63,919 nucleotides of DNA, filler included, from Octopus bimaculoides (GCF_001194135.2; 6 parts of 5 records of this genome joined end to end with filler, not necessarily neighbours in it), one strand, 5' to 3'. Counted from the whole stretch's first letter, positions 7,629 to 52,104 are shown. Made by a program: numbers and translations. Notes: generated by a model not told the origin, from the letters alone.

Positions 7629-8318
7629 TTTCTTACATCATCATCATCATTATTCTTCTGGTCGTGAGAACGACGACTATAATGACGAGAAGAAAATAAA
7701 ATCAAAAAAGCATAATAATGAAGATAATATATATTTTATTTCCTTGATTTTTTGTTATTTGTTTAATAAAACTGAAAACTTGAACATTAATGGCACAATC
7801 TAACAACGCACTAAAAGTAATTACTACGAAAGAAAGGGAAATAAATAGAAACGATATAAATAAGCTAATTTCCGCCATATTTCAAGTAATAAGTGAAGAT
7901 TTCGGTGTTGAAATTAATGAAGGCAGAAGTGAAAAACAAAACACAAACGATATAAAGTAACAGCAGAGCCAGTGTCGAAACACACACAAGCACATACGCA
8001 CACGCACGAACACACACACACATACACATACACACACATCATAGAAAAATGTCTATACACACGCGCACACACACACACACGCACACACACACACACACGC
8101 ACACACGAACATCTTTGCATATATATATATGTTTACATACACCTATATATATATATATGTACATATATATATATATATGTATATGTATATATATNNNNNN
8201 NNNNNNNNNNNNNNNNNNNNNNNNNNNNNNNNNNNNNNNNNNNNNNNNNNNNNNNNNNNNNNNNNNNNNNNNNATATATATATATATATATATATATACA
8301 TTCATATATATATACATT

Positions 8319-8361
<43 letters not shown>

Positions 8362-10451
8362 AAATTCATATAAATTCAAGTGTGTGTATTTATGTACATG
8401 TATGTATATGTATGTGCGCATATTTGTGTGTATGGTGGGGTATACAGAACTCTGTTATGGTATATAACAATAATATTTGGAAATTGCAAACATAAAGAAC
8501 TTCAGTAGTGAAGAGTATGTATAATGATAAAAGTATATAATACTTATTCACGTAAGGTTTTATATGAAGGAAGTGTATAGCAAGTTATAGAAAAATGGCT
8601 TCAACAAAGGGACGGAAAATGTGGAGGACAAAATAGATTTGAGAGGCGTTTTAAACAATTTCAGTTGTCAGAAATGTTCCATAGATGTTGCAGAGAATTC
8701 CACAAAAAAACATTTTAATGAATGAGGGAGAATATGAGAATGAGGGAATAGAGCGGAAAACCCAAGAAAATGGAATGAATATGCATTTTCCCCGTTGTCA
8801 CAGGATTTGAAGTTGGGTCTTGGATGGTGTGATGTCCTGACTTGCACGTGACATAGATTTAAGTGAGAGAGCGTTGCGCAATGTCATCTGCCTCACTCTC
8901 TTGTCTCTTCCTATTTGATTCTAGCAACAGGACGAAGTCAAGACGACTAGAAATAGGTCGGTATAAAGTAAGTGGTCACAATATCCTTTGTGTCTCATTG
9001 CTGGTCCGCCTTCCTGCCCGTTGAACCAATTTCGTGGGTTCCTCCGCACAGACCGCTGGGTTCAGTTTTCACGTTCAAAAGTAGAAAAGCCTTAGCTCAC
9101 CGAAGGTTAAGGCTGTTGGTAACCCTAAGCATGGTTTAGCCAGCCTATAGAAGCCGTTGCCAGGGGTGTGGTTATTATTGTATCCACATCTGTGAATATA
9201 TATCTAATGGAATACAATGAAGATTTGTGGATATGACTAGAATTGTTATTTGACATTGAAAGGGTGCAGGACAACTGGATAACATAGTTGTGTGTCTTGA
9301 TTATAAACACGCACATACACACGAACACACGCTCACTCACCCATTTACTCATTCACTCACTTACTCACTCCCTCACTCACTCACTCACACACTCATTCAC
9401 TCAGTCAATCACACTGGCATATATATACCTTAAAATAAATACATATATTTATACAAACGTGGAGCGGCATATGTAGTAGAATTACGTCGTAGAAATTCAT
9501 TTCATAAGAGGCTTGCGTGTTAACAACATAAAGCTTCGCTCAAAATGTTAGTGGCTCACCAGATACAGGTTTTCAATCTGATTTGGGCTCTTCAGTGACG
9601 AGTACGCTGGGCGTCCTAAACTAAACTGAAAATACTTATCCTGATATAGAAATCTGTAAACAAATCATTGACTGATTTGTGCAAAATCAGTAAATGATTG
9701 ATTAGATTAGAATCAAATGGATATATGCAAATGAAACAGGCTTAAATTAAAATGTCTGCGTGTATAACAACATCTGTAATGTATATACAAACGTGGAACG
9801 GCACTTGTAATAGTTTGTCTCATATTGAAACATATCATAAATGTTATGTAATATGCATGAGTGTATGTATGGTACGTATGTATATATGCTTGTATGTATG
9901 TGTATGTATGCATATATATTTGTGTGTTCGTGTATGTATGCATATATGCATGCATGTAAGTCTATATGACTACATGTATCTATCTACGTTTGCATATATA
10001 TGTGTATGTATGCATCTATGTATGGAAGTATGTATGTGTGTATGTATGTGGGTATATATATGTATGAGTGTGTAGTGATTATTGTTGTTATTTAATAGTG
10101 TTAACTATGTAATATCTTAATAGCAGTAATTAAAGACTTTTTGTTTTTACTTTTTTTTTGTTCTCTTATTGTTGATATTGACGTCGCCGTTATTGTTGTT
10201 CTTATTGCAGTTAGTTGACATTTTCCCCGCCTCCATTTCTTCCTATTCTTTCATATTTTATATATATATATTTTTCTTGTTGCTACCCTCGTTACTGTCG
10301 CTGCTGCTGTTGTAGTTCTTGTTGCTTCTACAATTGCTCTGGTTTCTCTTAATTTTAGTCCTATGTTATCATTTTCTATTTCCTTTTGCACTTCTGCAGC
10401 AGCAGCAGCAGAAGCAGTAGCAGCAGCAGCAGCAGCAGCAGTAGCAGTAGC

Positions 10452-10499
<48 letters not shown>

Positions 10500-10701
10500 T
10501 TGTTGTTGTTGTTGCTGCTGCTGCTGTTGCTTTCTGTCTCCTGTTTCCGAAGAAGAGCTATGTTCGAAACGTAAAACATCCACTCTTTCTTTCCTTCTCT
10601 GAGCGTCTCATTAATACTTTACATGTACTACGTCTTCACGTTGTTCTTTTTTTTTTTCGTGTTGTCTTTTTTCTCCGTTTTTTAAATTATTTATATACAT
10701 T

Positions 10702-11163
10702 GGCGCAGATGTGGCTCTGTGGTAAGAATCTTGCTTCCCAACGACATGGTTCAGGATTCAATTCCACTGTGTACCACCTTGTGCAAGTGTCTTCTACTAT
10801 AGCTTCGGTAGATGGAAACTGAAAGCCAATTGTATGTATGTATATATGTATTTGAGTGTGTGTGTGTGTGTGTGTATGTGTGTGTGTGTGTGTGTGTATG
10901 TGTGTGTGCGTGCGTGTGCGTGTGCGTGGGTATCTCTGAGTGTGTGTATGTGTGTGTAAGTGTGTGTCAGTGTTTGTAAACCCACCATTCTTGACAACCG
11001 GTGTTGGTGGGCTTACGTACCCGTAACTTAGCGGTTTGGTGTAAGACAACCGATAGAGTAAGTACTAGCCTTAAAAAAACATAAGATACATTCGACTAAA
11101 ATTTCAAGGCAGTGCCCCAGCATGGCCGCATTTTATTGGCTGAAACAAGTAAAAGACAAAAGA
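10702..11163 (+). mobile_element. tRNA-derived SINE family 1 (head GGCGCAGGAGTGGCTGTGTGGTAAG), near full length
   Basis: Colinear with the copy at 55556-55942: A/B-box-like head, central domain, internal (GT)n, CCAGCATGGCCGCA tail. Confidence 0.85.
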
Positions 11164-11602: not shown

Positions 11603-11789
11603 ATATATATATATATACCGAGAGAGAGAAAGGTGGGAAGGTAGAACAAGCCCTACCCTCTGCCGGTTCCTCTCATTCATTAAATTTTACTTCCTTCCAA
11701 TAATCATGAATGCTGCTACGTTCTAATACTGTCCTATGTTATCTGGAATTTGATGTATTGCACTTGAAAACCAAGCGATAAGAGTGGCC

Positions 11790-35100: not shown

Positions 35101-35631
35101 TTAAATGTTATATAGGTCTTAATATACATCTGCCTTTGAATCGGATGTGGTTGTTGGTATCTATTCTATTTCAATGAAGTTCAAATAGCTACAAAAATAC
35201 TTTCTATATAAAATGAAATAAAACACTTTTATAAACAAGCAAAGAAGCACGCACACATGTTTACACATATGTGCATACATATGCATAAATACACACACAC
35301 TCTCTCTCTCACACACACACACATATATGGTATTTCCTGTGTGTGAAGTTAGATATACGACTAATATTGGTGGCTTAGCGTTCCATATAGAGTAACAAAA
35401 TCCAATCAACTTCCTGTAAAGTGGAGTTTTTGCTATTGTACTTAGCAGCATTACCGGTCCTCTTCTACAGAACATCTGTAGAAAAAGGTATGATAAGCAC
35501 AAGACGCAATTTGTAATTTATTTCCGACCTACTGTTTTGATGGAATCTGAACACACCTGTGAAACGATAAATGAACTGTTCCGAAATGCAAAAATACGCA
35601 TGTGTACTGGAGATATCACAAGAGTGGCGTA

Positions 35632-37716
35632 GCTCTCCTCTCGTTGGTGTAAGTGTTAATTGTTCAGTTTAATAACTGTTGACCTGTTGTTTTTGTGTTT
35701 AAAAACACCTTGTTTTGCCGTCTTTCGGCAGTGTTGTTGACATCCCCCCCCTTGTTTGAAGAGGGAAGCGCTGTATTTTTTGTGCCTTCATAATGGAATA
35801 CAAAAATTTGAGTTCTTCAAACTTAACGTCGTCGAAAGCAGAGTTGCTAAGAGCAATAGACGCCTTTGAAAGGATAATGGAAAAAGAAAGACAAAAGATT
35901 TTCTGGCTATGACTAGAGGCAACAGTGACAAAATAAGCGTTGAGAGGAGGGACCTGGAGAAGTTCAAGGAAATGTTACAAAGGGAGGGGCAAGAGGTTAA
36001 GGTGACACCTCTCAACAAATTACAAAGACAACCAAAGAAAAAACAATAATTTACAGAACATATTATATAAAATTGATGAAGATAGAAATAGCAACAAAGG
36101 ATCAAGTAGAGTTAGCCCTAAAATCCACCTTGCAGGATATTACTTACCTTGTCAGAGGGAAGAGGTTTGCCACTGTGGAGATGCGGTTTCCGACCGAAGC
36201 AATAGCCAGGCAGCACTCAGTAGCTTCCCTGAAGATTGGTGTGGTGGTTCTTCTGTCCATTTACCTTGGAAGGCGTGCTTCCGGGATTAGGGTGGAAGAA
36301 ATCCCTCCAGAGTTGGATGTGGCCTGGCAGGTGGCAGCAATACCGCTAGGACTAGAACAAAAGATTGTGATCCTCCGAACAACAAGAACAGATCAAAGTA
36401 ATTGGCAAGGGCAAGGCCAAGAGATTGTCATCCGGACTACCCCGGTGGACCTGGAGACGATAGTCAACGAGGTGAGACTTAGGATCCCGGAGAAGGTACG
36501 GATGATTATGCAGCCGCGACACGAAGAAGGGAGAAACGGTTCTGCATCACGCCGGAGACAGGCAAGAAGTTCTGGTCATTTTTTCAGCGGGAGAGAGACA
36601 ACAGGAGGTTATCTCCCCCCACCCAGGAGGTGATGGAAGGAATTAAGAGAAGAACAATTGTTTATAGGACGCTATCTTTGAAGACCAGAAAAATAGAGAG
36701 AGTGTCAATAGAGGAAATTGAAAAAGCATTGAAGCTGGTGTATGCGAAGCGCGGAAGAAAGTATGGAACGGTGGAGTCGCAGTTTGTGGCTTAGAGCGAT
36801 GCCAAAACTAACTCGGCGACTACCCTGCAGACAAGTGAATTGGCTCTTTTGACGTCATATCTAAGCAAAAGATGGACGAAAATAAAGATAAATGGGTTTG
36901 ATCCTAAAATCAAACCAATATAAAAAAAAGAGGTGACACTCATAGAGTTGGAAGAAAAATGTACCCAGAACTAGTGTGGCAGGGGTGTAAGAGCAAAAAT
37001 CCAGGCTACACCAGCAGATATGGATAGCTCACCAGACTTCGTCATCCTTCCGGATGATACAAGAGTGAAGGTCACCGTTCAAGGCAGAGTACCAAAGTGC
37101 TTGGGGTATGAGCAAAAAGGGCACAAAGAAAAACGTGCCCCATGGCCTACAACTTGAAGCACAGGTAGAAAGCCAGATGAAAGCCAGTATACAGCAGGAA
37201 GAGGGGATGGGGAAGACAGAGAAAGACACACTGTTTACTTCAACGACTACAGAGCGGAGGGAGAAGCAGGAGGAAGAGATGGTGGAAGGAAAAAGGAAGT
37301 AGCACAATTGACAACTTCTACAGAGGTACGTAACGGTGAATGGCAGAAAAAAGAAAATTACTCATTCTCTCCCTCCCACAAACAAAAAATCCAAAACTTA
37401 AAAGACTTTTCAAACAAGAACACACATGAACATTAACAACAGAAATAAATGAAAAAGTCAAAAATAAAGAAAACACAACAAAAAGAAACTGAGATGATTC
37501 CACCAAGCAAAGTGAAAAAGAAAGTTTATGTTAGTTTTAAAAAGTGTTCAATGATGTTGCCTGGATCGTGGAGCACGAGTGACCATAATTTCATCCTTTT
37601 CATTTATTAAACATACATTTTCTCATTCGATTTTTTTTTCTTTTTTCTTCGGCCCCACTTGTAATGTCCTGTATCGTCCCATCTCTGTGTAGTCCCTTGT
37701 GGATAATAAAAAGTCA
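35632..37716 (+). mobile_element. Element A: L1/Tx1-related ORF1-only retroelement containing two degenerate ORF1 modules (~35793-36515 and ~36520-37300)
   Basis: KTIIYRTY...RGKRFATVEMRF...YLGRR...IRVEEIPPELD, then RTIVYRTL...RGRKYGTVE...VKVTVQGRVPKC..(Y)EQKGH; AATAAA at 37705; flanked by AAGAGTGKCG. Confidence 0.75.
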
Positions 37717-37726
37717 AAGAGTGTCG

Positions 37727-39571
37727 ATGCCCCATTTTTTAGCTGGACGGCGTTTTTATTGTAAGTTAAACTGTCTTATTAATTGTTAAATTGCTGCTAA
37801 ATTGCTGTTAATCTATTGTTTCATGTTTAACAAGGCTTTGTTTTGTTGCCTTGCGGCAGTGTTGAGAACGTTTTCCCCCTTGTTTAAAGGGGAAGCGCTG
37901 AATGATGGATTACGAGGGCTTGAGCTCTGATGAGGTGACATCCTCAGAAGAGGAACTGTTGAGGGGTATCAACAATATCGATAAACAAATGAAAGAAAGG
38001 AAGGATTTAGCGGTTGTGGCTGGAGGTTTGAATAGCATGGATGGCGAGAAAAAGAGTTTTGCAACAGTGACTATTGCGAAGAGGGATGAAGTGAAAAATG
38101 AAGCATTAAAACTCGAACAATACGGATGAATACTGCATAGGGAAGGCCACGAAGTCCGTGTAACGCCACCCTGTGAAGTGGCTCAAGAGACAGCGAGAAA
38201 GACAGTCAAATTCATAAGTTTCAGCAAAGAAGAGAGAAGAATTAATGTCGCAAATAAAGGGGAAATAGGGAAGTGTTTGGCTCCCATCTGGGCGGACATA
38301 ACATACGAGACAAGAGGAGCCAAATACGCAACGATGGAAGTGAGATTTGCCCCGGAGACGAAGGCCAGGCAACACGCCATGGTCATGTTATCTACAGCGA
38401 AAATAGTACTCCTTCCGACATACCGTAGGAAGGAGGTGAATGTAACGTGGATAATTGCAGCTATAAGTACTGAGCCAAGAGAAAAAGATAATAGTCCTCC
38501 AGGCCTCGAAAACTCCAGGGAGCAACTGAATAGGGCAGTGCCTGGAAATGCTTATCCAAGCCGCCCCTGATGCCCTGGACAACATTGTCGGTGAGTGAAA
38601 GGAGGTAAAGGGTGATGGTAGCGGGCAGGAGGCCGAGGTGTTTCCAGAGCGGAAAGCTTGGACACACGGGAGCGAATTGCTCCCTACCCCAGTCCTGTGG
38701 AAGTAACCAAGGAAGTGCCGATCGAGACTGCAACTCTTCCTATCATGGCGTCCAAAGTAGTGAGTGAGTGCAACGAGAAACAAGGAAATAAGTAAGAAGC
38801 AACTAGAGAGTGGATAAAGGTAGGTAAAAGAAAAAAAATAGAAAGAGAAGGAAGAGGAAACAAACAAGTGAAGATGACCCCCAGCTGCACTCGCCATCCC
38901 CCCATCCCACCCTAACCCACCTTCCACTACAGGCACCAACCTTCGTCCTGCCCTACCAAACACTGTCCCTGACCCTGCCCTAACAACAAAACAAGTAATC
39001 AAATATCAAAATCTTCCCAGCACCCTCACCGTGAAAAGAGCTACGTAGTAATATTCAACTATTCATCTAGTAAGCTGGTGAAGGAGTTGGAGAAAACGAA
39101 TAAAGGAGTGAAAGTATGCGACATTGAGGAGTATTTTGAAGGAGACATAAAAGGAGTAGTCATAGGCGAAGGTAGCCTGAACGTTTTGAAAAGGAAATAT
39201 GAACTGGTTGTAGAAAAGTCATCGATTGAAATCGACTGCGCTCAAGGACAAAAGGCTCGTGAGTGTGCACGATTACGATTTGTGAGAATTTAAAAAAAAA
39301 ATGTCTGGCATGTCATAATTCGAAAAATCTTCCTGAAACTTTTAAATGTGTGTAAATATTGTGACATGAGTATAATTGTTGGAAAATTTTGTAATTGTTT
39401 ATCAAAAGTTAAAACGAGGTCACTCAGAGTGTGAGGTTCGAGTGGCTTTCATTCCATCCATTCATTATTTCATAGCATCTTTCTCATTCGTTTACTTTTT
39501 CCCCACTTATGTGTTTACCTGTCCTAATGTTTTCACCTCTGTGTCAGGCCTTAATGGCGGAAATAAAATTA
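37727..39571 (+). mobile_element. Element B: L1/Tx1-related ORF1-only retroelement, degenerate
   Basis: MMDYEGLSSDEVTSSEEELL...RGAKYATMEVRF...LLPTYRRK...RRPRCFQSGKLGHTGANC knuckle at 38639-38680; AATAAA at 39562; 5' and 3' UTRs similar to element A. Confidence 0.75.
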
Positions 39572-41351
39572 AAGAGTGTCGTATGCGCTGCCATATATTA
39601 TACAGAGAGGTTTAGAAGCTATTAAGAAGAGATATCGTTAGAATACGTGTTTGTGGTTTGAACAGTTGGTGAACAAATATACAATAAGTTTGCAAATACA
39701 TTAAAACGTCATAACACCTACGCTTCTCCATTTTGGTTGCTTGCATTCCTGCAGTTGGTGCTCTGTGTGCAATGGGATGCTGAAGCACAGAAGTTATCAG
39801 ACTAAATATGTTATGGAATTATTGTTACACAAATTAAATGATGTAAACTTCATCTTATTGTTATCATATATCTGTGCGTGTGTGTGTGTGCGTGCGAACG
39901 TGTGTGTATGCACGCTCACGCACAAACTAGTATCAATATACAGATTTTTATTTTTGTGAATATGTAGCTTGGAAATACATTTCTACGTGCCCAATGTTAT
40001 GCAGGCTGTACCAAGAACAGTGTCGCACACACTGAGCAAAATTTAATTTGAACGTCCAATTTTACATACTAATTAGCTATAGATATGTCACCTCTACAAA
40101 TAACTCTATTCTAATCAGCTGCACGATACAATCTTTCTCTGTTGTGAATTACCCTCATTAATGTTTCACTCTCGCGGACTGTTTAAATTATAAAGCAATA
40201 ATGTCAAGTTGACATTCTTAGATTAAAGTATATTTTTTACATTGTAAGCCCATATGAAATTCAGAGTTGTGTAAATTGTTAGGTATGATATAAAGTTGAT
40301 ATGTTGTGTTACAGTATACATAAAGATTTTTTTCAGATGTCTTTGGGAAAAGGCAAACTAAGTAATAAAAAGTATCCGTCACTCTAAAGCTTGAAATATT
40401 TGTAAATAAATTTCTTGAAATTTTAACATACTATGTGCTGTTTTTCATCATGAATGGTATAGTTTAAATATATAGAAAGCAAGAACCATAAGAATTTTAT
40501 GGGAAATCTCAAAGCATATATAACACCTATAATGTGATCTCACAATTTTCAACTTTTTTCTATTTCATCATCTGACACTCCTGGCACTAACGCTAAATTA
40601 ATTTAACAATAAGATATATAAATTGAATGCAAACGCGTATATTTGATAATGAAACGAATGTTTTCCGATAACGTTTCCTGAAATCATATTGAGGGTAATA
40701 TTATGGAATTTAGTAGTCCATACTGCAATTTATCATTTTTGAAATTATCGCAATGTTTGTTTCACCTTAATAGAGAAAGTAAAGGATAAAACACATAAAC
40801 ATAGATTTAAAAAATGAACAGCTAAACGGTCATACAGAATATACATTTACATAATCATATCGACATGTATTTAGCTGTGCATTTGGCAAATGCGTATCTA
40901 AATAGAAGACATACTTATGTATTTGTTGCTTATATTCATTTTATTTTATGTTTGTATCACGGAAAATTGTAATGACATCCCGGATTCAGAAATATGTATC
41001 TCTACAGCTATTGAAATTTTAAAGTATTATTTACTTTAATTGATTCTCAGTTAATTCATTAAAGTTCAATAAAATAAATATCAAATAATTTTAATGAAAT
41101 AACCAGCTCCGAGAAATGTAGTACACGTGTTTTAATAACATCAATTTTTATGTTACATGGGGGAAAATAAACATTTATCAGCATGAAGAACTATAGGCAT
41201 AAAAATTGATTATAACATTTGGAAGTTATATAAAGATACCCACAAAATCATTATTTTTTAAAGAAAGATTACATTCGCATGTGTTTTTATTCTATATTAT
41301 TTGGTTTTCATTAAATTCTAAATGTTTGGAAAACAGGAGAAAAACATAACC

Positions 41352-41387
41352 GGGCGCAGGGGTTGCTGTGTGGTAAGAAGCTCGCTT
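41352..41387 (+). mobile_element. SINE family 1 head, split by element C
   Basis: GGGCGCAGGGGTTGCTGTGTGGTAAGAAGCTCGCTT; the remainder resumes at 42967. Confidence 0.8.
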
Positions 41388-42966
41388 TCGGTTTATGGTT
41401 GTTCAATTGCATTGTTGGATTTGTGTGAGATACACGTGTTATTTGGCTGTACTGGTTTTTTTGGCTGTTCGACGTTTTTCCTCTTGTGTGATGGAGGGAT
41501 GTTGAACGAGAGGTTGTGAAGGTTTCAGTTGTTCTGCTTTAAGCATTGAAGGCTACACTTCCTCGGCCTATATGACGTCAGAGGAGGAGATGGTGGAGTG
41601 CCTGGCGAAGATAGACAAGGCTTTGGAAGAAAGAAGCCATGTTGCGGCGACGGAGGAGAGGTGCGAAGAAATAAGGTTGGAGGATGTAAACAAGTATAAG
41701 GGAATGCTGAAAAGGGTGAGGAATGAAGTGAAGGTGTTCCCCCACGAAGAAGTCTTAAAGAAAACAGCGGAAAGAACGATAGTTTATAGGACGTACTCGA
41801 TGGCATCTGCAAAAATAGAAAACATGTCTACGGTACAGATAGAAAAGCGGAAAGACCAGTCTGGCAAGGGATCTCACACCTTGCCAGAGGTAAAAGAGTT
41901 GGAACGATTGAGGTGCAGTTCTACCCGTATACCTTGGGAGATATAGTTCCAGGGTTAGGGTGGTGGAAACACCCCCAGAGGTGGATGTAGCCAGGCCAGT
42001 GGATGTAACCAGGCCGGAGGCTGCTATATTACTTGGAATGGAGAAGAAGGTGGTGGTCCAACAAGCAACCAGAACACCTCATAGCAACTGGAAGTAAAAA
42101 CCCGTAACATGGTGATGCAAATCGCGGAGGAGAGCATCGAAATCTGGTCGAAAGTATCACAGTGGAGAGTCGACTTTAAAGTTAGAGTGGAAGGGAAGTT
42201 TCCGCGTTGTTATAAATGTGGCCTCAAAGGCCACATTAGAGCGGAGTGTCCTCCACTACTAGAAAAGGACAAGAAAAGACAGAAGGAAAATGTGGTTGGT
42301 GCTACACTGCCTGTGGAGGAAGTAGTAAGTGAGGTGGAACCACAGAAGAATACAGACACGTGGAGTGTCTGGAATAATCGGGATTGATAGCTTTTGTTGT
42401 CAACGATGGGAAGAGTTCAGCTATCGGCTGAGTCTATTATCAAGGTTGTGCCACCTCGTCTCCTTAACAAGGAAAAGAAGGCTTGTTTTTTCTGCGTAGT
42501 AGCCATACTGAAATAAACAGTATGGAAGACGCATGTAAGAAGTATAGTGACAAGCAACTTTGTCTCTGCCCAGGGGTTGGTTAACTTCTTTAGTTACCAC
42601 CTCGATAACAAGATCAACCTGGAGAAGAGATACCTGTCACAGAATATGTTCGTGAAAAGATAGAAGCAAGTAGTGAACAAGATGCGAATGACTGGAACCA
42701 GGCAAGTGGGGCCAGAGGGAAAAGTAAAAGTTGGAACTTAGCGATTGGATGCCTTTCCTTCAGTCACACATTGCAAAATTTGCAATAATCATCAAGTTTA
42801 ATCGAAATTTATTTAAAAAATGATATAATTTTTAAAAGCATGACATTTATATTTTATCATTCGAAACATTCTCATTCGTAATAAGCAGCTCCTTCACCCT
42901 CTATGTTTGTCTGCCCATGTCTTTCCCATCTATGTACGGTTTCCTGAGTCAATTTATGAAATAAAC
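41388..42966 (+). mobile_element. Element C: L1/Tx1-related element, ORF1 joined to the last ~70 codons of ORF2, EN and RT absent
   Basis: MTSEEEMVECL...RTIVYRTYS...LPVYLGR...; intact knuckle CYKCGLKGHIRAEC at 42208-42249; then GRVQLSAESIIKVVPP...VVAILK.TVWK...QGLVNFFSYHL; AATAAA at 42960; TSD AAGCTYGCTT. Confidence 0.8.
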
Positions 42967-43345
42967 AAGCTTGCTTCCCAACCACATGGTTCCGGGTTCA
43001 GTCACACTGCGTAGCACGTTGGGCAAATGTCTTCCATTATAGCCTCAGGTCGACCAAAGTCTTATGAATGGATTTGGAAGACGGAAACTGCAAGAAGCCC
43101 GTCGTATACATATGTATATATGCGTGTGTGTGTGTGTGTACGTATTTGTGTATCGGTGTTGTCCCCACTAACCATCACTTGATGTTTGTGTGTTTACGCC
43201 CCCGTAACATAGCGTTTCGGCAAAGAGACCGATAGAGTAAGGCTTACCAATATTAAGTCTTGGGGTCAATTTGTTCGACTAAAACATGCATTGCACCAGC
43301 ATGGCCGCAGTCAAATGACTAAAACAAGGAAAAGAATAGCAGAAA
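42967..43345 (+). mobile_element. SINE family 1 body and tail (continuation of 41352-41387)
   Basis: AAGCTTGCTTCCCAACCACATGGTTCCGGGTTCAGT... through CCAGCATGGCCGCAGTCAAATGACT. Confidence 0.9.
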
Positions 43346-44389
43346 AGAAAATGCATATCATTAGCAAAGCGTTTTCCAGTGCTCTAATATTGTGATGTTA
43401 CCAGCATTAATAAGTCTAAGAATTGCGGTCTCCACTCATTGAATGCTATTAACAATCTTTACCTTTATCTCGTAAAATGTTTGAAAATATTACCATATAA
43501 TTTCATATGCAATTGCTTGATTAACGTTGCTGTTTTACATCTTCTTTATAACCGTTATAGTTCTTTTATAAAGCTCACACGCGCATACACGCATACACAT
43601 ACACACACCCTCACACACACATACAAATACACACACAGATGCACATATACAAAAATATGTGAGCGGTTGCACTAGCATACACATATTGGCGTTCGTGGGA
43701 ACATGGCTAATTCAATGCCAATAAAGAATTCAAAGTGCAAGGCATAAGTGAAAATAAACAGAGAGAAAGGAAGATAACAAGTGTGAAAGGCAGAAGGTGG
43801 TAGGTCGGGTTACCACAACGCTATTGGTGAAGGTGGGTGATAGAATGCGTGATAGTGGAATTAACTCTAATGGTGGTGGAGCTAGCGGTAAAGCCTGAGG
43901 GGGCTGTGGGTTTGGCGGATTTTGTAGTGGCGTGGGCGTACTAATGGAAATGATAGTGATGAAAATAAAGACTATGACGATGGTAATTCTAGTATCAGTA
44001 TTCATAATAAGTGACGTTGGCGATGATTAGCGGGCAGAAATTGGGATGGCGATGTTCATGATGGTGTTAGATGATGCTGATGGTGATGAACGTTGAGGAG
44101 GTTGGGGTCATGTTAGGGATAATTATATTGAAGATAACGACGACAAGGACAAGGTGGGGGACGATGAGGGTGAAAGTAACCATGAAGAAGATGCTGCTGA
44201 TGGTGATTTTATGACAGAAGTAACACTGGTTCTGGCGGATGTATCGGGGGCTAGGTGTTTATTTAACTTTCAAGTGTGGAAATGGTGATACTTGTGATGT
44301 ACGTGAGGATGGCTGACAGCGGAGAGGGATGAATTAAATACTGTGGTTATGTGCAACACTAAAAATAGGATCGCAGCACCACAAAGACA

Positions 44390-45620
44390 CCCACAAAAAA
44401 TTCGTTCAATGCTCATCGTTCTCACTCATCAGTCAGGATATTGCGAGAAAGAAGCACTTCCTATTCCACCGTCATTTTCATTTCCGATGGAAACATGAAA
44501 AAGTTCCTGAAGGCTTGGTCAAAGCAGAGGGTGTCTGTCTTTAGCTCTTCCAATATCATCCCTTGCACAACCTCTTTCGCCAAACCCACCAAACAGATAG
44601 AAGCTGACTGCTGCTACTGATCAAAAGTAGGCAGAGGAATGGTATAGGTAATGCTCAATCATGAGATGCATGCGTGCAAAACGGGTCCATCATTGCACGC
44701 ACAGTGAGCAGAACCTGCTCGCTGATAGCTCTGCTTCGCCAGAGATTTCCGAAACTTACCCAGATCTCAGACCAAAAGTACTCTAGTTCTGAACAACCAG
44801 TTGATTATCATGAACGTTCAGAGTTTCTCTGAGAATACGGTTGCCTTTTCCCGACACTAGTTAGCTACAGGACCACCAATGTGGACTTTTCACAGATCCC
44901 AATGCCTAACTGAACGAAGGCTGCTGGTGCTTGATTGCATTTTACATGCCAAGCACCAAATCTCGGCCTCTGATTGACTTAGCACCGCAATTGTGTCAAA
45001 GAGACACGAAACTGATAAAATTACCACACATTTTCACTGTTAAAATGTATCGCCTGGTAATATTACAACAGCGCCTCATTAACCATTGTATGCCCAGCAT
45101 CCAATTAGCGGGTGTTTGCTGCAGAGGAATAGTCTGATTAACAGAACGTATCCATTTTACAAAAGCCGAAATATCAAGCACTCCAGTCTGACCAGTCGTA
45201 ACCTGAGACAAGGCTAGGCAGTCAGGCAATATATGAGTTCCTTACTTCTCCTTGACATATAACGAATGGTTCCCTCACAATGGTTTTCGGGGAGAGCGGC
45301 CAACCTTCTCGTCACCTCGTTTCAGTTTTTGTTCACTTAAAGATTTCGACCAAACCAAATCTTAAGGAATTTAGCTGGTGTGTCTGTCCAGCACCCGAAA
45401 ATGTTACTGGACAGCTTGGGTCTACTTCTCCAGATGCCCACATGCAAGCACATCGACTTTACCTGATAAATATCGGCTCTTGTCACTCGTGTCACTGCTT
45501 CGTTGCAACGTACAGCCATGCTTATCACCTCAATGCCTACCCGAAAGAACACAAAGAATCTACTGCGTGACACTTATCGATTTGGAGATGTGTACACACC
45601 ATAGTAGTCAACGTAGCGTA
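44390..45620 (-). mobile_element. L1/Tx1 ORF2 3' half (end of RT to C-terminus), heavily decayed
   Basis: KSMCLHVGIWRS...WTDTPAKFLKIWFG...NEVTRRLAAL; W...QQTPANWMLGIQWLMRR; HCACNDGPVLHAC; ICLVGLAKEVVQGM...QAFRNFFMF. Confidence 0.75.
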
Positions 45621-46255
45621 TACCGTTGTTGGTCAAGTTAATATAGTTTCCGATAAAAAGACAGGAACTGGCTGTAACCAAGCCGGTTTCCAAGTACAGA
45701 TGGTCTAATCTATCAAAGTTGTTCCATTGACCCAAAAAGGAAAACACTTAAAAAGTCGGTAAGGAAAATTTCTGTGTGAGTAATTTACTTATCTACGCTT
45801 TCTCCAACGCAGCGTAGGAAAACGAGATATTCTCAACATCTCTCACCTAATTAGCTACATAGCACGGTGGAAAGGGTCGTGGGGTGGGACGGACAGTCAA
45901 AGACTCTATATGCCCAGAAATAATAAAAGTCTAAGTAAGAAGCGGACAACGTAGAATACTTGATATCGTGCTGAAATAGTTCAAGTACACCTTGATGTGT
46001 TATGTTATGCCAAGGACCTGTTATATTTCCCGGTCTACTGTTAGATATATTTTTATCAATTTGTATTTACAATATACTAGTTCCATATACAAATAAAAAT
46101 TTTAAAACTCGTAACCGATCAATATTTATGCAGTAAGTATATACATACATATGTATGTGGGGATGTTTGCATGTAAATATGTATGTATGTGTATCATATA
46201 TCTTTATATACATACACACATATATACACACAAATACACATACATACACACACTC

Positions 46256-46296
<41 letters not shown>

Positions 46297-47871
46297 TTGA
46301 AGTAACAGACAAAATTCTTTCAAGTACACAGACTAAATTAAGATGTGTGATATACAGTACACGCCTTCCTCTACACCACTTACTTGTATACATCGCTATA
46401 AGATATTTTCAAATGTAAGTAAAATTATAACTGGTTTTAAGTTCCAGTTACTATGCAGGAAAGATGGTCATATTTTCCCCAAAAGCAATTTTCAACAAAT
46501 TTGTTTGCTATTAATTGAAAATTGCTTATAATAACGCCGCGGGAAATATATCAAACACTTAATTGCATTTCAGTCCATTAACCAACATATAGCTTGAAAT
46601 GCAGTGTTCAAAATGGAAATTTAAAATGTTTACTGGAGAATTCCCCGTGTGTATCGTACCTTAAAACACTATCTACAACTCTAATTTCTAAAACTACATT
46701 CTTCTGATTTAAAATTCGATAATCTAAATGACCTGTGAAATTATTCAGCAATTGTATGCAACTTTTCGAATATTCGAAGTTTCGTATTTGCTAAAAGAAG
46801 TTCAAACGGATTACTAAAGCAGCGTTGATCTTGTAGATGTGATCTTGTCGCAATGTTCGGAAGTTCATTGGTGTATCCCTGGTGTTTCATGTTTGGGTGT
46901 AATGTATCCTGCCTCAGTTTCAATAGGTTTGACATTTTTTGTTTATGTTCAGAGATCGATTTTGTCCTACTTATCCATTATATTTCGTGGATTTGGTTTG
47001 AAATTTCTACTTTTTACCTTCATCAATATAAATTTTACCTCCGACATGAATTCCATGTTAACTGTACAAATAAAACTGTACAGCGACGTTAGTGCAAGAA
47101 CGTTAGGAGCATGTTATGCGCATACATTTTCTTTTATGAGGTGTCACATTAGCATTCCTTTTAAGGCAATATCCTCTGAGGATGTTAATCGTATTAATAG
47201 TTGTTCTCATTTTTCCAACTCAAGTGATTGATAGAAACGCGTGCATTTTTATTCTTAATTTGCTCTTAACTTAATGTTAATCGTTTTAACTCGTATTTAG
47301 TGTTTGTTTTCAGTTGCCAGCCGTACTTTTCTTCACATTTTTTTTTATTTTGTGTAAATTACTCCATAGTGTCTTAGAAATGAGCCACAAATTTGCGTGT
47401 GATGTGAGATAAAAATCAAAGAAATATTTAAATACAATTTATCGTTAATGTATTGAGTTTATTTACTTTTACTCCCAAGAATATTGTGCATCATATGTTG
47501 GTCATCGATAATTTCAAATGAAAATTATTGTCTATGGACAGGAAATGCGTCCATTGACAACTTCTACGATTTGTTATTTATTTGAACAGGCTGAATAAGT
47601 TTCGTAATTTATAAACAAATACCTTATGTTAATCATTTTGATTGGATGGTCACCCTTAATTTTTCCGTCTAAATAAGAAACTTGCCGTTATACGCTTTAA
47701 CAACAGATACAATTTCAATGCTTTTATTATAGGAATTGATCACTAGCATTGTACAGATAGCTGCGTCATAGCCAACATACTCAATGTACTATATTAACAA
47801 GTTGAAGAAGATGCCTTACATTTAATACATTTCCTTAGCATTACACCATCTTGTCATTATTTTATGACGTT

Positions 47872-48040
47872 CAGGTGGTGAGGTGGCAGAATCATTGGCA
47901 CACCACTTTCTCAGTTCAAATTCCTCCGAAAATGACTTTGCTTTTCATCCTTTCGGTGTCTGTAAAATAAATACGAATTGAATACTGGAGTCAATGTCAT
48001 CAGCTTGCTGGCCTTGTGTCAGCATTTGAAACCATTATTT
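47872..48040 (+). mobile_element. SINE family 2, degenerate
   Basis: GGTGGTGAGGTGGCAGAATC head, CTTTGCTTTTCATCCTTTCGG, GGCCTTGTG tail. Confidence 0.65.
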
Positions 48041-48654
48041 ACTCAAGAACTATACGTCACAAAAGAAATTGGTACAATAACACTATAAAATTTAATGTTT
48101 TCAAAAACCCATTACTTGTATACACAATGAATAGCAGATAAAATATATTTTGATATCAGTGAGACATTTAACAATTTAAGACCCTGCATTTGAATCCACT
48201 TTCATCCTTGCAGAAACATTTTTTAACCAAATAATTTTTTTTCTATCCACTCTTATGTAATTCGGAATTACGAGCAGTGACTGAATATATTCGAATGAAC
48301 TAATCTCATTAATCACGTTTAGATATTAATAAATTACTTTGATAGCCTATTATTTTCACTTCAGTTAATATTACTCATATTTTCTGGAATGAAGATGTAA
48401 CGCATATCCCACTGAGTATACTGCCAGCACAAATGCCTAAATTTAGAAGATTATCAAACAGGTGTAACGTTGCTTAGTACATAAACTCGTATTATATGAA
48501 TGGAAAATTAACGTATTGGGCTCCATATATTACCCCAGCTAAATTTGTAAATCAGTGCTTAATTAACTGAAATTACATGAAAGACACAGAGATGCAAGCA
48601 CGTGCATTTAAGCAATTTCACCAAAAATGTTGATAACTACAACGGCAATTTAAG

Positions 48655-48875
48655 TTATATTCTTTTATATTTTCACTTGTTTCAGCCATTTTGACTGCGA
48701 CCGTGCTGCTCCACCGCCTTTAGTCAAACAACTCGATCGCAGGACTTATTTTTGTAAGCCTAGTACATATCCTATCGGTCTGTTTTGCCGAACTGCTAAG
48801 TTACGGGGACGTAAACACACCAACATCGGTTGTCAAGTGAGGTGGTGAGACAAACATAGATACACAAATGCATAC
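48655..48875 (-). mobile_element. SINE family 1 3' half (probable continuation of the head at 50526-50558 across the gap)
   Basis: Reverse complement TTGACAACCGATGTTGGTGTGTTTACGTCCCCGTAACTTAGC...GCAGTCAAAATGGCTGAAACAAG. Confidence 0.85.
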
Positions 48876-49100
48876 AAGTATGTGTGTGTGTGTGTATAAA
48901 TATATATATATANNNNNNNNNNNNNNNNNNNNNNNNNNNNNNNNNNNNNNNNNNNNNNNNNNNNNNNNNNNNNNNNNNNNNNNNNNNNNNNNNNNNNNNN
49001 NNNNNNNNNNNNNNNNNNNNNNNNNNNNNNNNNNNNNNNNNNNNNNNNNNNNNNNNNNNNNNNNNNNNNNNNNNNNNNNNNNNNNNNNNNNNNNNNNNNN

Positions 49101-50525
49101 TTTATTTCATAAAATTCACCACTGGGGCGTAACACAGAAGCAATACAGACTGGATTAATACATTAATGGGATGAAAAATGAAAAATACAAATGTTGTAAA
49201 TGGGAGGGGTATTCGGCGCCCGCCGACCGAAAACCCCTCGAAATCACAGTTCTTTACAATTCAATTTACAATTTAAATTACAATTCAATTTAAATTACCT
49301 CAAAATTAAATCAAATAAGGCACTGAAGCCTCTTAATTATCTTCCCCGAGTAATTTTTTTGCCGACGTAGGTCAGCCTGCTGCGACAAGTCGGGGCCCAT
49401 AGAAAGGAATTCAAAAGTCTTCCTTTCTGAAGGAGGCCATTATCTCAAACAGTTCTCCGTTACTCAAAACCTCCGCATACTCCTGCAGAGGACACTCTGG
49501 ATAGTCCAAACGTTCGCGGTCCAATGTACTATCCATATAACACTTCACAACCCCTCCCCTATTGTAGAATATAATGCAATCACTATCCCACTCACCGGGG
49601 CGGGGTCATTAATCTCTTTCATCGGTGGCACCATTCCGACCGATGAAGCATCAGGACATGCCGTGGTGCACTATCATCCGTCGGCCGTGTCCCGATTCTC
49701 CTCCTTCTGTTCTTTGAGTTTGAGAGAGTAGGGGCCTCTGTTGGTTTAACCGGAAGGTCCACCTATCCCGCAACCTGCGGATCCTTCGGTGAGCAACCAT
49801 TGTTGCTCACCTTCTTCCGCTTTCTCTTTTACGTGGAGGCAGTCACCTCCACGACTTCCTCCGTCTCTCTCTCCAATGGGGGAGCTGAGGATACCTTTTC
49901 TGTTTCCCGCTCCAGGGCCTTACCTCGTCATCGGGGGAAGTTCTTCCTGATATGGCCAGGCTCCAGGAACAGATGACACTTGTGGGGCGCACTCGAGTAT
50001 CACCGGATACCTGGAACCGACAATCTTCAAAAAATCGGGAAAAATAAGGTCGCCGACTGACTGGGTCCATAGAGTCAAAACTGCTTTTGATCCCGCCCAG
50101 TCAGTCGAGGCCTCGATTTTTACATTGAGGAGCTTGTTTCCGCTTCTGCCCAGACCCCGGTGAACGGTTTCTTCATTCCATTATGGTCGGACTCCAGGCG
50201 GCAAACCGCAGACCCAAGCGCTCGTTACTTTCTTCCCACAATATGTGGGGAGGAACAATATCTTTTCCCCCCAGGTGCTACCTTGCGCAATTGCAAGCTT
50301 CCTCAAGAGTGTCAAATAGCAACCACACCGTTGCATATTTCACACCTCTGGATATAAAGTAATTCTTTGTTGGCAAACATTTTGCCAGCTCTATAATAAT
50401 CTCTTCATTGTCGAAGAGGGCGATGGCGTCAAGCGACCTAGAATAGGTCCTCAACACCACCCTCCTCTTCTCAAGGTCCTCAAGCCACTACTTGGGTGGG
50501 ACAATCTCCCACTCCAAGACAGGTG
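49101..50525 (-). mobile_element. Element D: 5'-truncated L1/Tx1-related ORF1-only element
   Basis: RRVVLRTYS...RGVKYATVWLLF...LPTYCGKKV...WVCGLPPG; degenerate knuckle KCHLFLEPGHIRK; 3' end GAATTTTATGAAATAAA, like element C. Confidence 0.75.
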
Positions 50526-50558
50526 AAGCAAGCTTCTTACCACATAGACACTCCCTCA
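50526..50558 (-). mobile_element. SINE family 1 head, split by element D
   Basis: Reverse complement GAGGGAGTGTCTATGTGGTAAGAAGCTTGCTT. Confidence 0.75.
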
Positions 50559-52104
50559 CATAATTTATATATAAACTACTTTTATTTACTATTCTGACAC
50601 TTATTGCTTTCGGATTCTTCATCATTTACTGAAGAGCACTAGAGGTTTTGACCTGAGGATAGTAATTTCGAAAATATATTCAACGTAACATTATATTGTA
50701 TATACGTAGCTAAATACTAGATAACAGCTGGAAATTTGACAGACATTTTAAAGTCTATAGCAAGCAATGAACTGCTACTCAAAAGTAGTACGTGTAGTCA
50801 CTGTTAAGAAGAACTATACATGAGATTTGGTTTAAAATGATAATTCGTGTGCAGGAGTGGTAATCATTACTAACAAATATTTTACAAGGCTACATTCCAC
50901 AATAATGCATCGAATGTGTAATTTTACAAATTAGGAAATTGATTAAAATATTTAAAGTTATTTGAAATTGAGAATCTGAATTGAAAGGGCCATCAACCAC
51001 GTGATTCAAATATGACAGTATTTGGTCTAATTTAAAATACCATGCTGACAACCCTAAAACTTCTTTAAAATTTGCATATTTTATAACTATGCAATTTTTA
51101 ATTTGTTGTCATTTATTGTTCCAGATTTTATGCCTGCTTCCGATTTTGCAGTAAATGCAAACTGTGTTTATATCCATAGAGAACATTTCGTTTTTATAGT
51201 GAATATTCAGTTTTAATGTGATAATTTATTACATCTTAGCATTCATTTTTCTTTTTTTTTGCAAAAGCAAGTTAGTAATCGATAATATAACTGACGTAAA
51301 TTTCAAATGCTAAATATTTAATAAGTTGAGATATTCAAAAGTGCTGACATTAATTTTCCCAATGTTTCCACATCACCTGATTGCGTATCGATGCAATTTC
51401 TTTCAAATCTATGTATATCTATGCGTGTCTCATTCGTGTCTTTTTAGGCATAACCATTGGTGCGCGCGCGTGTGTCTATATATGCATTTGAATTCACAGC
51501 AGGGCTTCTCATGTTACACTTTCCGCGTATTGCTTTTTATGACGTTCTATCACCCCTCGAGTATTACTATTCATTTTCTTTATTATTGGGACAATATTTC
51601 ATTAACAAGAACGGTTCAGACATTAGGTTCTTCCTCACCTCATTTATTCTTAGTTGTATTACGCTCTTAACCACTTGACGACATATATTTACAATTATTC
51701 TTTTGCTCTCCATTTTCTTTTTGCATTACATTTGCGTTCAGATATATGGGCTTACGCTTCGTTATCTGAGTCTATCAACTTGACATATTACACTGTCTTC
51801 TTTCCTTCTTCCATTTATTTCATTGTCGGCTCTTATTTCCACTGACACTTTTTATATACTGTCTATCATACATACCTGGTTTCGCAAGCTGTTCCTTATA
51901 TTACTTTTAGTTTTATTCCATTATATTGAACTCTGTCATTTCACTTTATTTGATGTTTTCTTAATTACATTTTTTGTATACTAGCATTTCAACATTTCAC
52001 TATATTTTGCATTTCATGGTTTTTCGTCAAGATATTTTGTTTTCGTCACTGTTAAGTAAATCTTCTCTATCAAATATATGTACCGTTATTCTGTAAATAA
52101 ATTG

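What the first reader, a model, noticed from the sequence alone, without database searches (positions are those of the whole stretch)
41352..50558. Two independent ORF1-only L1/Tx1 elements inserted at the same base of a tRNA-SINE head: a retrotransposon that targets SINEs
Seen: element C (41388-42966, +) starts right after GGTAAGAAGCTCGCTT of a SINE-1 head and ends AATAAA-C-AAGCTTGCTT, after which the SINE resumes (10-bp TSD at 41378-41387 and 42967-42976, 9/10 identical). Element D (50525-49101, -) starts right after GGTAAGAAGCTTGCTT of another SINE-1 head and ends GAATTTTATGAAATAAA. The SINE 3' half lies beyond a 188-N gap at 48655-48875, which is large enough to hold the missing SINE middle. 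C and D are highly divergent and oppositely oriented, so this is not a segmental duplication. Known: Tx1-clade elements often target multicopy RNA genes and repeats (U2, 5S, tRNA spacers, microsatellites). Inference: a Tx1 lineage recognises this site between the A and B boxes of the SINE or its parent tRNA, gaining a huge supply of safe landing sites while disabling the SINE Pol III promoter.
Basis: partly seen in the sequence, partly recalled or inferred. Interest (0 to 1): 0.88.

Follow-up and report, generated by a model that had tools for sequence, protein, structure and literature searches.

The report
Octopus LINE that targets a SINE
Two decayed, unrelated-looking copies of an octopus L1/Tx1-like jumping gene sit at exactly the same base inside two copies of a short repeat (SINE), and three more copies from other octopus genomes share that junction, so this lineage homes to a fixed site in the SINE: a new target for a behaviour already known in Tx1-type elements.

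Summary
Element C (41388-42966, +) splits a SINE after ...GGTAAGAAGCTCGCTT. It ends ...TTTATGAAATAAA-C and is followed by AAGCTTGCTT (a 10-bp target-site duplication, 9/10 identical) and the rest of the SINE. Element D (50525-49101, -) starts after the same SINE base and ends with the same 13-nt terminus at the edge of the N gap. The SINE 3' half lies beyond the gap in the right orientation.

C and D share no alignable DNA inside, but both encode decayed members of one octopod-specific ORF1 family with two RRM-like domains and a CCHC knuckle. C also keeps the last 102 codons of ORF2, so it is an internally deleted LINE. Full-length relatives have an APE-RT ORF2 closest to human L1 ORF2p.

Three further copies have the identical 5' junction: two in Octopus sinensis and one in a public read assembly. 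A tandem pair carries a TSD-like 11-mer between its two copies. Sister families sit in (ATT)n, in (TA)n, or at another 11-bp site.

Verdict: site-specific insertion into a SINE is supported. It is a new target within a known kind, because Tx1-clade LINEs already target other transposons, small RNA genes and microsatellites.

Open points:
- D's second TSD is hidden in the gap.
- Two O. sinensis copies lack the downstream SINE part.
- Tx1 placement and tRNA origin of the SINE head are untested.

The parts
41352..41387 (+). SINE copy A, 5' head (ends ...GTGTGGTAAGAAGCTCGCTT). Its last 10 nt (41378-41387) are the left copy of the target-site duplication.
   Evidence: aligned with five intact SINE copies from O. 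sinensis loci.
41388..42966 (+). Element C: an internally deleted, decayed LINE. It comprises a 5'UTR, an ORF1 remnant, an ORF2 C-terminal remnant and a 3'UTR. It ends ...TTTATGAAATAAA plus one extra C.
41572..42387 (+). C ORF1 remnant, spread over three frames with stops. The CCHC zinc knuckle CYKCGLKGHIRAEC lies at 42208-42249.
   Evidence: Pfam zf-CCHC, E 1.4e-4. It is 46% identical to P0017 and 37% to P0004 of the octopod ORF1 family.
42394..42699 (+). C remnant of the last 102 codons of ORF2.
   Evidence: tblastn with the ORF2 of the full-length LINE in L003: 48% identity, E 1e-23.
42953..42965 (+). Terminal 13-mer TTTATGAAATAAA shared with D.
   Evidence: only two matches in the window.
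42967..42976 (+). Right copy of the 10-bp target-site duplication, AAGCTTGCTT.
42977..43335 (+). SINE copy A, remainder. It holds the B-box-like GGTTCCGGGTTCAGTC at 42988-43003, an internal (TA)n(TG)n stretch and the 3' half.
50526..50560 (-). SINE copy B, 5' head (ends ...ATGTGGTAAGAAGCTTGCTT).
49101..50525 (-). Element D: a 5'-truncated, decayed, ORF1-only LINE derivative. The ORF1 remnant lies at about 50544-49694, with a mutated knuckle at 49981-49934. It has a 3'UTR with AATTGTAAA repeats and ends GAATTTTATGAAATAAA at the gap edge.
   Evidence: 63% identity to O. sinensis P0001; 72.7% DNA identity to L001 over 770 nt.
48913..49100 (.). Assembly gap of estimated length. It should hold D's second TSD plus about 130 nt of SINE middle, but this is unverified.
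   Evidence: size argument from copy C.
48655..48912 (-). SINE copy B: internal microsatellite and 3' half, in the same orientation as the head at 50526-50560.

Best explanation
C and D are dead, non-autonomous derivatives of an octopod L1/Tx1-like LINE lineage. D retains ORF1 only. C retains ORF1 plus a stub of ORF2. The apurinic-type endonuclease of this lineage cuts one defined site in the 5' head of an abundant octopus SINE.

Inferred mechanism:
- The endonuclease of an autonomous partner nicks the bottom strand opposite GGTAAG^AAGCTTGCTT.
- That 3' end primes reverse transcription of an RNA ending ...AATTT(T/C)AT(G/A)AAATAAA.
- The top strand is cut 10 bp downstream (AAGCTTGCTT^CCCAACC).
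- The insert therefore always lies in the SINE's orientation, directly after ...GCTTGCTT, and is flanked by a 10-bp duplication.
- The duplication recreates the core site, so a second insertion can give head-to-tail pairs separated by one copy of it.

Shown:
- The identical junction in five copies from three ORF1 families and at least two genomes.
- The TSD and resumed SINE at C.
- 5' truncation at D.
- The shared 3' terminus.
- LINE ancestry: the ORF2 remnant, and full-length relatives with APE-RT.

Inferred:
- The nick positions.
- That specificity lies in the endonuclease of a partner not yet found.
- That the split between A-box and B-box regions silences the SINE copy.
For: - Junctions: five heads are interrupted at the same alignment column, namely C, D, L001 4487|4488, L013 11738|11739 and L002 200|201. 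Their upstream flanks are unrelated.
- TSD and resumed SINE at C.
- D lacks the 513-700-nt 5'UTR and the first codons present in L001 and L013, yet has the same junction.
- C and D interiors are unalignable, but they share the 13-nt terminus.
- Tandem C-like pair in L014...AAAATAAA-GAAACTTGCCT-CCGGTATAACG....
- Same ORF1 family. The AlphaFold model of P0001 (pLDDT 80) matches tandem-RRM proteins. Pfam finds a CCHC knuckle.
- ORF2 remnant in C.
- Full-length relatives L003 and L004 have Exo_endo_phos, RVT_1 and zf-RVT domains. Their best solved relative is human L1 ORF2p at 4e-62. Their EN matches L1-EN at 1e-11, and no R1Bm or TRAS1 EN appears at E<=1.
- Sister families show their own fixed targets: L004 lies in (ATT)n on both sides, L005 lies in (TA)n on both sides, and window elements E and F share an 11-bp TSD at three junctions.
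- Literature: Tx1-clade LINEs target DNA transposons, LTR elements, snRNA and 5S genes and microsatellites (PMC4494074, PMC4640811). L1-Tx1 families are annotated as recently active in O. vulgaris (PMC13282606).
Against: - Only one complete 3' junction with the SINE resuming (C) was seen. D's is hidden in the gap.
- L001 and L013 have the head but no downstream SINE remainder or second AAGCTTGCTT. Their 3' parts end in microsatellite.
- The first copy in L014 is flanked by (AG)n, not by a head.
- L016, a family with a similar tail, abuts a reverse-oriented SINE instead.
- No autonomous copy with this tail and target was found.
- The sample is small and was ascertained through ORF1 homology.
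- Tx1 placement rests on elimination, not on a tree.
Confidence: 0.8

Rival explanations
1. The SINE head is carried by the element's RNA, either by read-through from a master copy lying in a SINE (5' transduction) or by template switching of the reverse transcriptase onto SINE RNA. In that case head plus element is the mobile unit and the SINE is not a target.
For: L001 and L013 have the head plus a full-length 5'UTR but no downstream SINE part. The head always begins at the SINE's own 5' end. Tx1 families with U1- or U2-derived heads are known (PMC4494074).
Against: C has the 10-bp TSD and the SINE resumes after it. D is 5'-truncated by more than 500 nt yet still abuts the head, and a SINE tail lies beyond the gap. 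Three families with unrelated 5' ends share the same breakpoint. No TSD bracketing head plus element was found in L001 or L013. This mechanism may still explain some copies as off-target insertions of read-through RNA, alongside true targeting.
Confidence: 0.12
2. One ancestral SINE-plus-insert composite was copied, by segmental duplication or as a retrocopy, and C, D and the others all descend from it.
For: Same junction in all copies. SINE parts are 73-90% alike.
Against: The interiors of C and D are not alignable at all, while the flanking SINE parts are. ORF1 identity between the families is below about 30%. The upstream flanks are unrelated. D is truncated, whereas L001 and L013 are full-length.
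Confidence: 0.02
3. Chance, or a generally fragile spot: the SINE is very abundant, and the palindromic AAGCTT site attracts any insertion.
For: SINEs make up about 11.6% of the O. vulgaris genome (PMC13282606). Only this LINE clade was examined, so insertions of other elements at the site were not looked for.
Against: Five hits at the same nucleotide and orientation cannot arise from random insertion into a repeat of about 400 bp. All inserts belong to one ORF1 clade, and where the 3' end is readable they share one 3' tail. Five intact SINE copies in the same loci carry no other insert there.
Confidence: 0.03

Closest known systems
Tx1L of Xenopus laevis and the crocodilian Tx1-Mar families (Tx1 clade of L1-like LINEs)
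   Same: These are APE-type LINEs with an RRM/CCHC-type ORF1. They insert at fixed places inside another transposon family: Tx1D piggyBac, Mariner-N4_AMi, Harbinger and LTR elements. Sister lineages target microsatellites or small RNA genes. Non-autonomous passengers share the target (PMC4494074).
   Different: Here the target is the head of a SINE, in a cephalopod. The literature searched describes no SINE target and no target-specific LINE in octopus.
Keno, Dewa, Mutsu, Kibi and Koshi (Tx1-clade families targeting U2, tRNA arrays, 5S, (TC)n and (TTC)n)
   Same: Sequence-specific insertion into multicopy sequences. Microsatellite-targeting relatives exist in the same clade; here L004 lies in (ATT)n and L005 in (TA)n.
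   Different: Those targets are host genes or simple repeats, not a retroposon. True tRNA genes were not examined here.
HAL1 (half-L1), the ORF1-only L1 derivatives of mammals
   Same: A non-autonomous LINE derivative that keeps ORF1 and the 3' end and has lost ORF2. D, L005, L006 and E/F are of this kind, and C is an evident deletion derivative. This comparison rests on my own knowledge, not on a tool result.
   Different: The ORF1 is Type I (RRM+CCHC), not Transposase_22. There are many independent ORF1-only families, and they are target-specific.
U6/L1 and other small-RNA-LINE chimeras; SINEU heads
   Same: A small-RNA-like head lies directly upstream of LINE sequence. Heads can be acquired when a target-specific Tx1 is co-transcribed with its target (PMC4494074).
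   Different: At C the SINE continues after the insert with a TSD, so the head is target DNA rather than a chimeric addition. The L001 and L013 copies might be of this kind.

Membership tests
Non-LTR retrotransposon (LINE) and its non-autonomous derivatives | Descent from an element encoding reverse transcriptase and endonuclease | tested here: met
   C keeps the last 102 codons of an ORF2. Full-length relatives L003 and L004, which share the ORF1 family, carry Exo_endo_phos, RVT_1 and zf-RVT domains.
Non-LTR retrotransposon (LINE) and its non-autonomous derivatives | Target-site duplication, variable 5' truncation and a constant 3' end | tested here: met
   C has a 10-bp TSD. D is 5'-truncated compared with L001 and L013. 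C and D share the 3' 13-mer.
L1/Tx1 group | ORF2 (EN+RT) closest to L1-type rather than R1/TRAS-type or RLE-type elements | tested here: met
   Human L1 ORF2p scores 4e-62 over 730 aa, against 1e-24 for R2 over the RT only. The EN matches L1-EN at 1e-11, and no R1Bm or TRAS1 EN appears at E<=1. This was tested on relatives, not on the unknown partner of C and D.
L1/Tx1 group | Type I ORF1p: RRM domain(s) followed by a CCHC knuckle (PMC5203782) | tested here: met
   zf-CCHC is found in C and in relatives. The AlphaFold model of P0001 shows two beta-alpha-beta-beta-alpha-beta modules, and Foldseek matches tandem-RRM proteins SFPQ/NONO and UP1 with probability 1.0.
Tx1 clade proper | RT domain groups with Tx1 references in a phylogeny | not testable with these tools
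   No Tx1 reference sequences were reachable. The supporting facts are indirect: L1-Tx1 is the L1-like class annotated in O. vulgaris (PMC13282606), and the target-specific behaviour fits.
Tx1 clade proper | Target-sequence preference (a sequence seen in more than 20% of flanks, the criterion of PMC4494074) | tested here: met
   Five of about 14 assessable 5' junctions in the ORF1 clade are the SINE head at one base. Within the C, D and P0035 families the count is 5 of 5 for non-tandem 5' junctions. The sample is small and biased.
ORF1-only LINE derivative (HAL1-like) | ORF1 and 3' end retained, ORF2 absent | tested here: met
   D has no ORF2 similarity. C retains only a 102-codon stub. L005 and E/F are alike in this respect.
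tRNA-derived SINE (the target) | Head recognisable as tRNA-like, with A and B boxes | tested here: inconclusive
   ARAGORN found nothing in three copies. Rfam gave no tRNA match at E<=10 in two intact copies. A B-box-like GGTTCnGGGTTCAGTCC motif and a GTGGTAAGAAGC A-box-like motif are visible. The repeat itself is real, with five intact copies in the O. sinensis loci.
Small-RNA/LINE template-switch chimera | Head joined to the LINE with one TSD around the whole and no target remainder downstream | tested here: not met
   At C the SINE resumes after its own 10-bp TSD. This stays unresolved for L001 and L013.

The most novel reading that the evidence does not exclude
The head-bearing copies without a downstream SINE (L001, L013) may be retrotransposed read-through RNAs that start in the SINE head. 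If so, this lineage both homes to the SINE and exports 'SINE head + LINE body/tail' chimeras. That would be a live view of how promoter-bearing heads are joined to LINE tails to found new SINEs, as proposed for SINEU and Tx1-Mar. It would occur in a genome whose second major SINE already carries this LINE clade's 3' tail.
Probability: 0.2. Interest if true: 0.65.

Novelty: new member of a known kind. Interest (0 to 1): 0.45.

Why it matters
- It adds a SINE to the list of targets used by sequence-specific APE-type LINEs, and it adds cephalopods to the hosts of such elements.
- One octopod LINE clade appears to have diversified into lineages with different fixed targets: the SINE head, (ATT)n, (TA)n and another 11-bp site. 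Each lineage has many ORF1-only passengers. This is a natural series for studying how an L1-like endonuclease changes specificity, which bears on targeted-integration tools.
- For annotation, head-plus-LINE junctions recurring genome-wide can mislead automatic repeat libraries into chimeric consensus sequences. Intact ORF1 copies are currently annotated as host genes (for example LOC115225585).

Tried and rejected
- Three word-indexed protein searches returned almost nothing beyond P0001. Only the exhaustive representative search found the family.
- P0017, the closest relative of C, has no gene on record.
- ARAGORN and Rfam did not recognise the SINE head as tRNA.
- A search for a TSD bracketing head plus element in L001 and L013 found none.
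- A sensitive blastn search for D's 3'UTR in L001 and L013 gave only weak hits up to the small post-ORF1 segment.
- Segmental duplication was rejected, because the interiors are unalignable.
- The 13-nt similarity between the flanks of L002 and L013 was judged to be chance or the SINE's own 5' edge (E 0.69).
- L015 and L016 were fetched in the hope of more junctions. L015 has no head. L016 abuts a reverse-oriented SINE.
- The source species of the window was not determined.
Full report
**What is in the window.** The piece is octopus-like DNA. The decayed ORF of element D is 63% identical to Octopus sinensis protein LOC115225585 (P0001), and all relatives found are octopod. The motif TGGTAAGAAGCT[C/T]GCTT occurs only twice in the piece (41371-41387 +, 50542-50526 -), where shuffles expect 0.11. 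Each copy ends exactly where a foreign element begins.

Element C (41388-42966, +) ends ...CAATTTATGAAATAAA-C. It is followed by AAGCTTGCTT (42967-42976), which is 9/10 identical to AAGCTCGCTT at 41378-41387. The SINE then continues with CCCAACCACATGGTTCCGGGTTCAGTC.... Element D (50525-49101, -) ends GAATTTTATGAAATAAA at the first readable base after the gap. The 13-mer TTTATGAAATAAA occurs only at these two ends in the window.

**The gap.** The right edge of the gap is D's terminus. The left edge (48912) is the (TA)n/(CA)n stretch that lies inside the SINE. It is followed by the SINE 3' half (48876-48676, 73% to copy A) in the orientation of the head at 50526-50560. In copy A the distance from the TSD to that microsatellite is about 140 nt, which fits in the estimated 188 N. 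Continuity is therefore plausible but unproven, and no reading frame crosses the gap. Contigs that break exactly at a repeat boundary are what a short-read assembly would give if the missing part is high-copy SINE. That last point is inference.

**C and D are independent.** blastn finds nothing between their interiors. It finds only the SINE head, the SINE tail and the 13-nt terminus. tblastx finds only the knuckle region, weakly. The two elements lie in opposite orientations, and D is 5'-truncated.

**What the elements are.** An exhaustive HMMER search with P0001 found 47 representatives, all octopod or from read assemblies. C's ORF pieces match this family (46% to P0017, 37% to P0004), and D matches P0001. 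C has a Pfam zinc knuckle, and D's knuckle has Cys-to-Phe changes. An AlphaFold model of P0001 (pLDDT 80) shows two beta-alpha-beta-beta-alpha-beta modules before the knuckle. Foldseek matches tandem-RRM proteins with probability 1.0. This is the 'Type I' ORF1p layout that the literature ties to plant L1 and to Tx1-like elements of non-mammalian animals (PMC5203782).

Loci fetched through family members show the autonomous form. L003 (O. vulgaris) and L004 (O. sinensis) carry ORF1 followed by an ORF2 of about 1,150 aa, with Exo_endo_phos, RVT_1 and zf-RVT domains. The best solved relative is human L1 ORF2p (4e-62 across EN and RT). The EN alone matches L1-EN (1e-11) but not R1Bm or TRAS1 EN at E<=1. 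For that query I joined the two APE reading frames conceptually across the frameshift near L003:7750.

Window 42394-42699 inside C is the last 102 aa of such an ORF2 (48% identity, E 1e-23). C is therefore an internally deleted LINE, not a purpose-built ORF1-only element. D has no ORF2 trace. Both ORF1s are broken by frameshifts and stops.

**More copies at the same base.**
- In L001 (O. sinensis CM016886, intact ORF1 = P0001) the head ...GGCTGTGTGGTAAGTAGCTTGCTT ends at 4487, and a 513-nt 5'UTR follows.
- In L013 (CM016865) a second D-type copy has ...GTGTGGTAAGAAGTTTGCTT|CCACTGCGCATG... at 11738|11739.
- In L002 (a read assembly, a third ORF1 family, P0035) the junction is ...GTATGGTAAGCATCTTGCTT|ACTTTGAAC....

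In an alignment with five intact SINE copies, all five interrupted heads stop at the same column. Their upstream flanks are unrelated. D lacks the whole 5'UTR yet has the same junction. This is expected if the head is target DNA and the top-strand cut is fixed. It is not expected if the head travels as the element's 5' end.

L014 holds two C-like copies head to tail...GGCCAATTTCATAAAATAAA-GAAACTTGCCT-CCGGTATAACG.... The 11-mer is a diverged copy of GAAGCTTGCTT, and the sequence that follows it is homologous to C's 5' end. This is the pattern expected when a second insertion uses the site recreated by the TSD. Tandem insertion is known for other target-specific LINEs (PMC4640811).

**The clade shows other fixed targets.**
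- The L004 LINE is flanked by (ATT)n on both sides.
- The ORF1-only element in L005 is flanked by (TA)n on both sides.
- L003 is a head-to-tail array of full-length copies.
- In the window itself, two further ORF1-only members lie head to tail: E at 35630-37713 and F at 37727-39570. Each of the three junctions carries one copy of an 11-nt site: CAAGAGTGGCG at 35619-35629, and AAAGAGTGTCG at 37716-37726 and at 39571-39581.

The SINE-associated copies whose 3' end is readable (C, D, L014) share the tail AATTT(T/C)AT(G/A)AAATAAA. The other lineages end ...CCTTGTGG(N)AATAAA.... This fits one partner whose RT recognises that tail and whose EN recognises the SINE site. That is inference.

**What does not fit.**
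- L001 and L013 have no SINE remainder and no second AAGCTTGCTT downstream. Their 3' parts run into (CA)n or (TG)n and lack D's 3'UTR, and I found no alternative TSD.
- The first copy in L014 is flanked by (AG)n.
- L016, with a similar tail, abuts a reverse-oriented SINE.

The L001 and L013 pattern could reflect later deletions. It could also mean that read-through RNAs carrying the head sometimes insert elsewhere. That second possibility is the rival, and also the more novel, reading.

ARAGORN and Rfam did not confirm that the head is tRNA-like, although B-box-like and A-box-like motifs are visible.

**Comparison with the known.** Target-specific APE-type LINEs belong to the Tx1 and R1 clades (PMC4640811). 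Tx1-clade families insert into the piggyBac element Tx1D, Mariner-N4_AMi, Harbinger and LTR elements, into U2, U5 and 5S genes, and into microsatellites. Their non-autonomous passengers share the target (PMC4494074). L1-Tx1 families are annotated as recently active in O. vulgaris (PMC13282606), but that paper does not mention targets. My searches found no report of a SINE-targeting LINE or of target-specific LINEs in octopus.

The finding is therefore a real, well-supported new member of a known kind. It has a new target class (a SINE) and a new host group. It is not a new mechanism.

Noticed in passing
window 35619-39581: Two more ORF1-only members of the same LINE clade lie head to tail: E at 35630-37713 (C-like ORF1) and F at 37727-39570 (P0027-like ORF1). 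Each of the three junctions carries one copy of an 11-nt site (CAAGAGTGGCG / AAAGAGTGTCG / AAAGAGTGTCG). This is a second, different, apparently specific target in the same 22-kb piece. What that target sequence belongs to is unknown.
   Followed up: partly
window 45100-45501 (-): Fragment of a LINE ORF2, 31% identical to residues 717-857 of the L003 ORF2. It is a more distant LINE and is not associated with a SINE head.
   Followed up: no
L013 7869 (+) and 36380 (-); L003 5684, 10962: A second octopus SINE ends ...TTTGTCCCCTCTGTGTTTAGCCCCTTGTGGGTAGTAAAGAAATAG. This matches the 3' tail of this LINE clade (L003: ...TTGTCCCCTCTTTGTTGGCCCCTTGTGGGTAAATAAAATAAAA). The clade is probably that SINE's mobilising partner.
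   Followed up: partly
L004 5720-5780 and 11340-11380 (O. sinensis CM016872): A full-length LINE of the clade (ORF1 = P0002, ORF2 at 7853-11086) is flanked on both sides by (ATT)n, which suggests a microsatellite-targeting lineage. The gene model LOC118765946 is built on it.
   Followed up: partly
L005 5560-5635 and 7720-7750 (O. vulgaris OX597833): An ORF1-only element (P0008) is flanked by (TA)n on both sides. Its 3'UTR has AATTGTAAAG repeats like D's.
   Followed up: partly
L003 450-13026 (O. vulgaris OX597840): Head-to-tail array of at least three nearly identical full-length LINE copies with a period of about 5.2-5.3 kb. The copies are joined directly (...AAATAAAATAAAA-CACTGATA-AGGACGTTAC...). 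ORF2 has a frameshift in the APE domain near 7750.
   Followed up: partly
L001 5001-5846 (O. sinensis): The D-type ORF1 is intact (281 aa) and is annotated as a host gene (LOC115225585). It lies directly behind a SINE head, which suggests either recent activity of this non-autonomous family or misannotation of a transposon ORF.
   Followed up: no
SINE heads in L001, L002, L004, L013 and the window: All five interrupted heads read ...TGCTT at the junction, whereas three of five intact O. sinensis copies read ...TGTTT-ACC. This may reflect a subfamily or site preference, but the numbers are too small to test.
   Followed up: no
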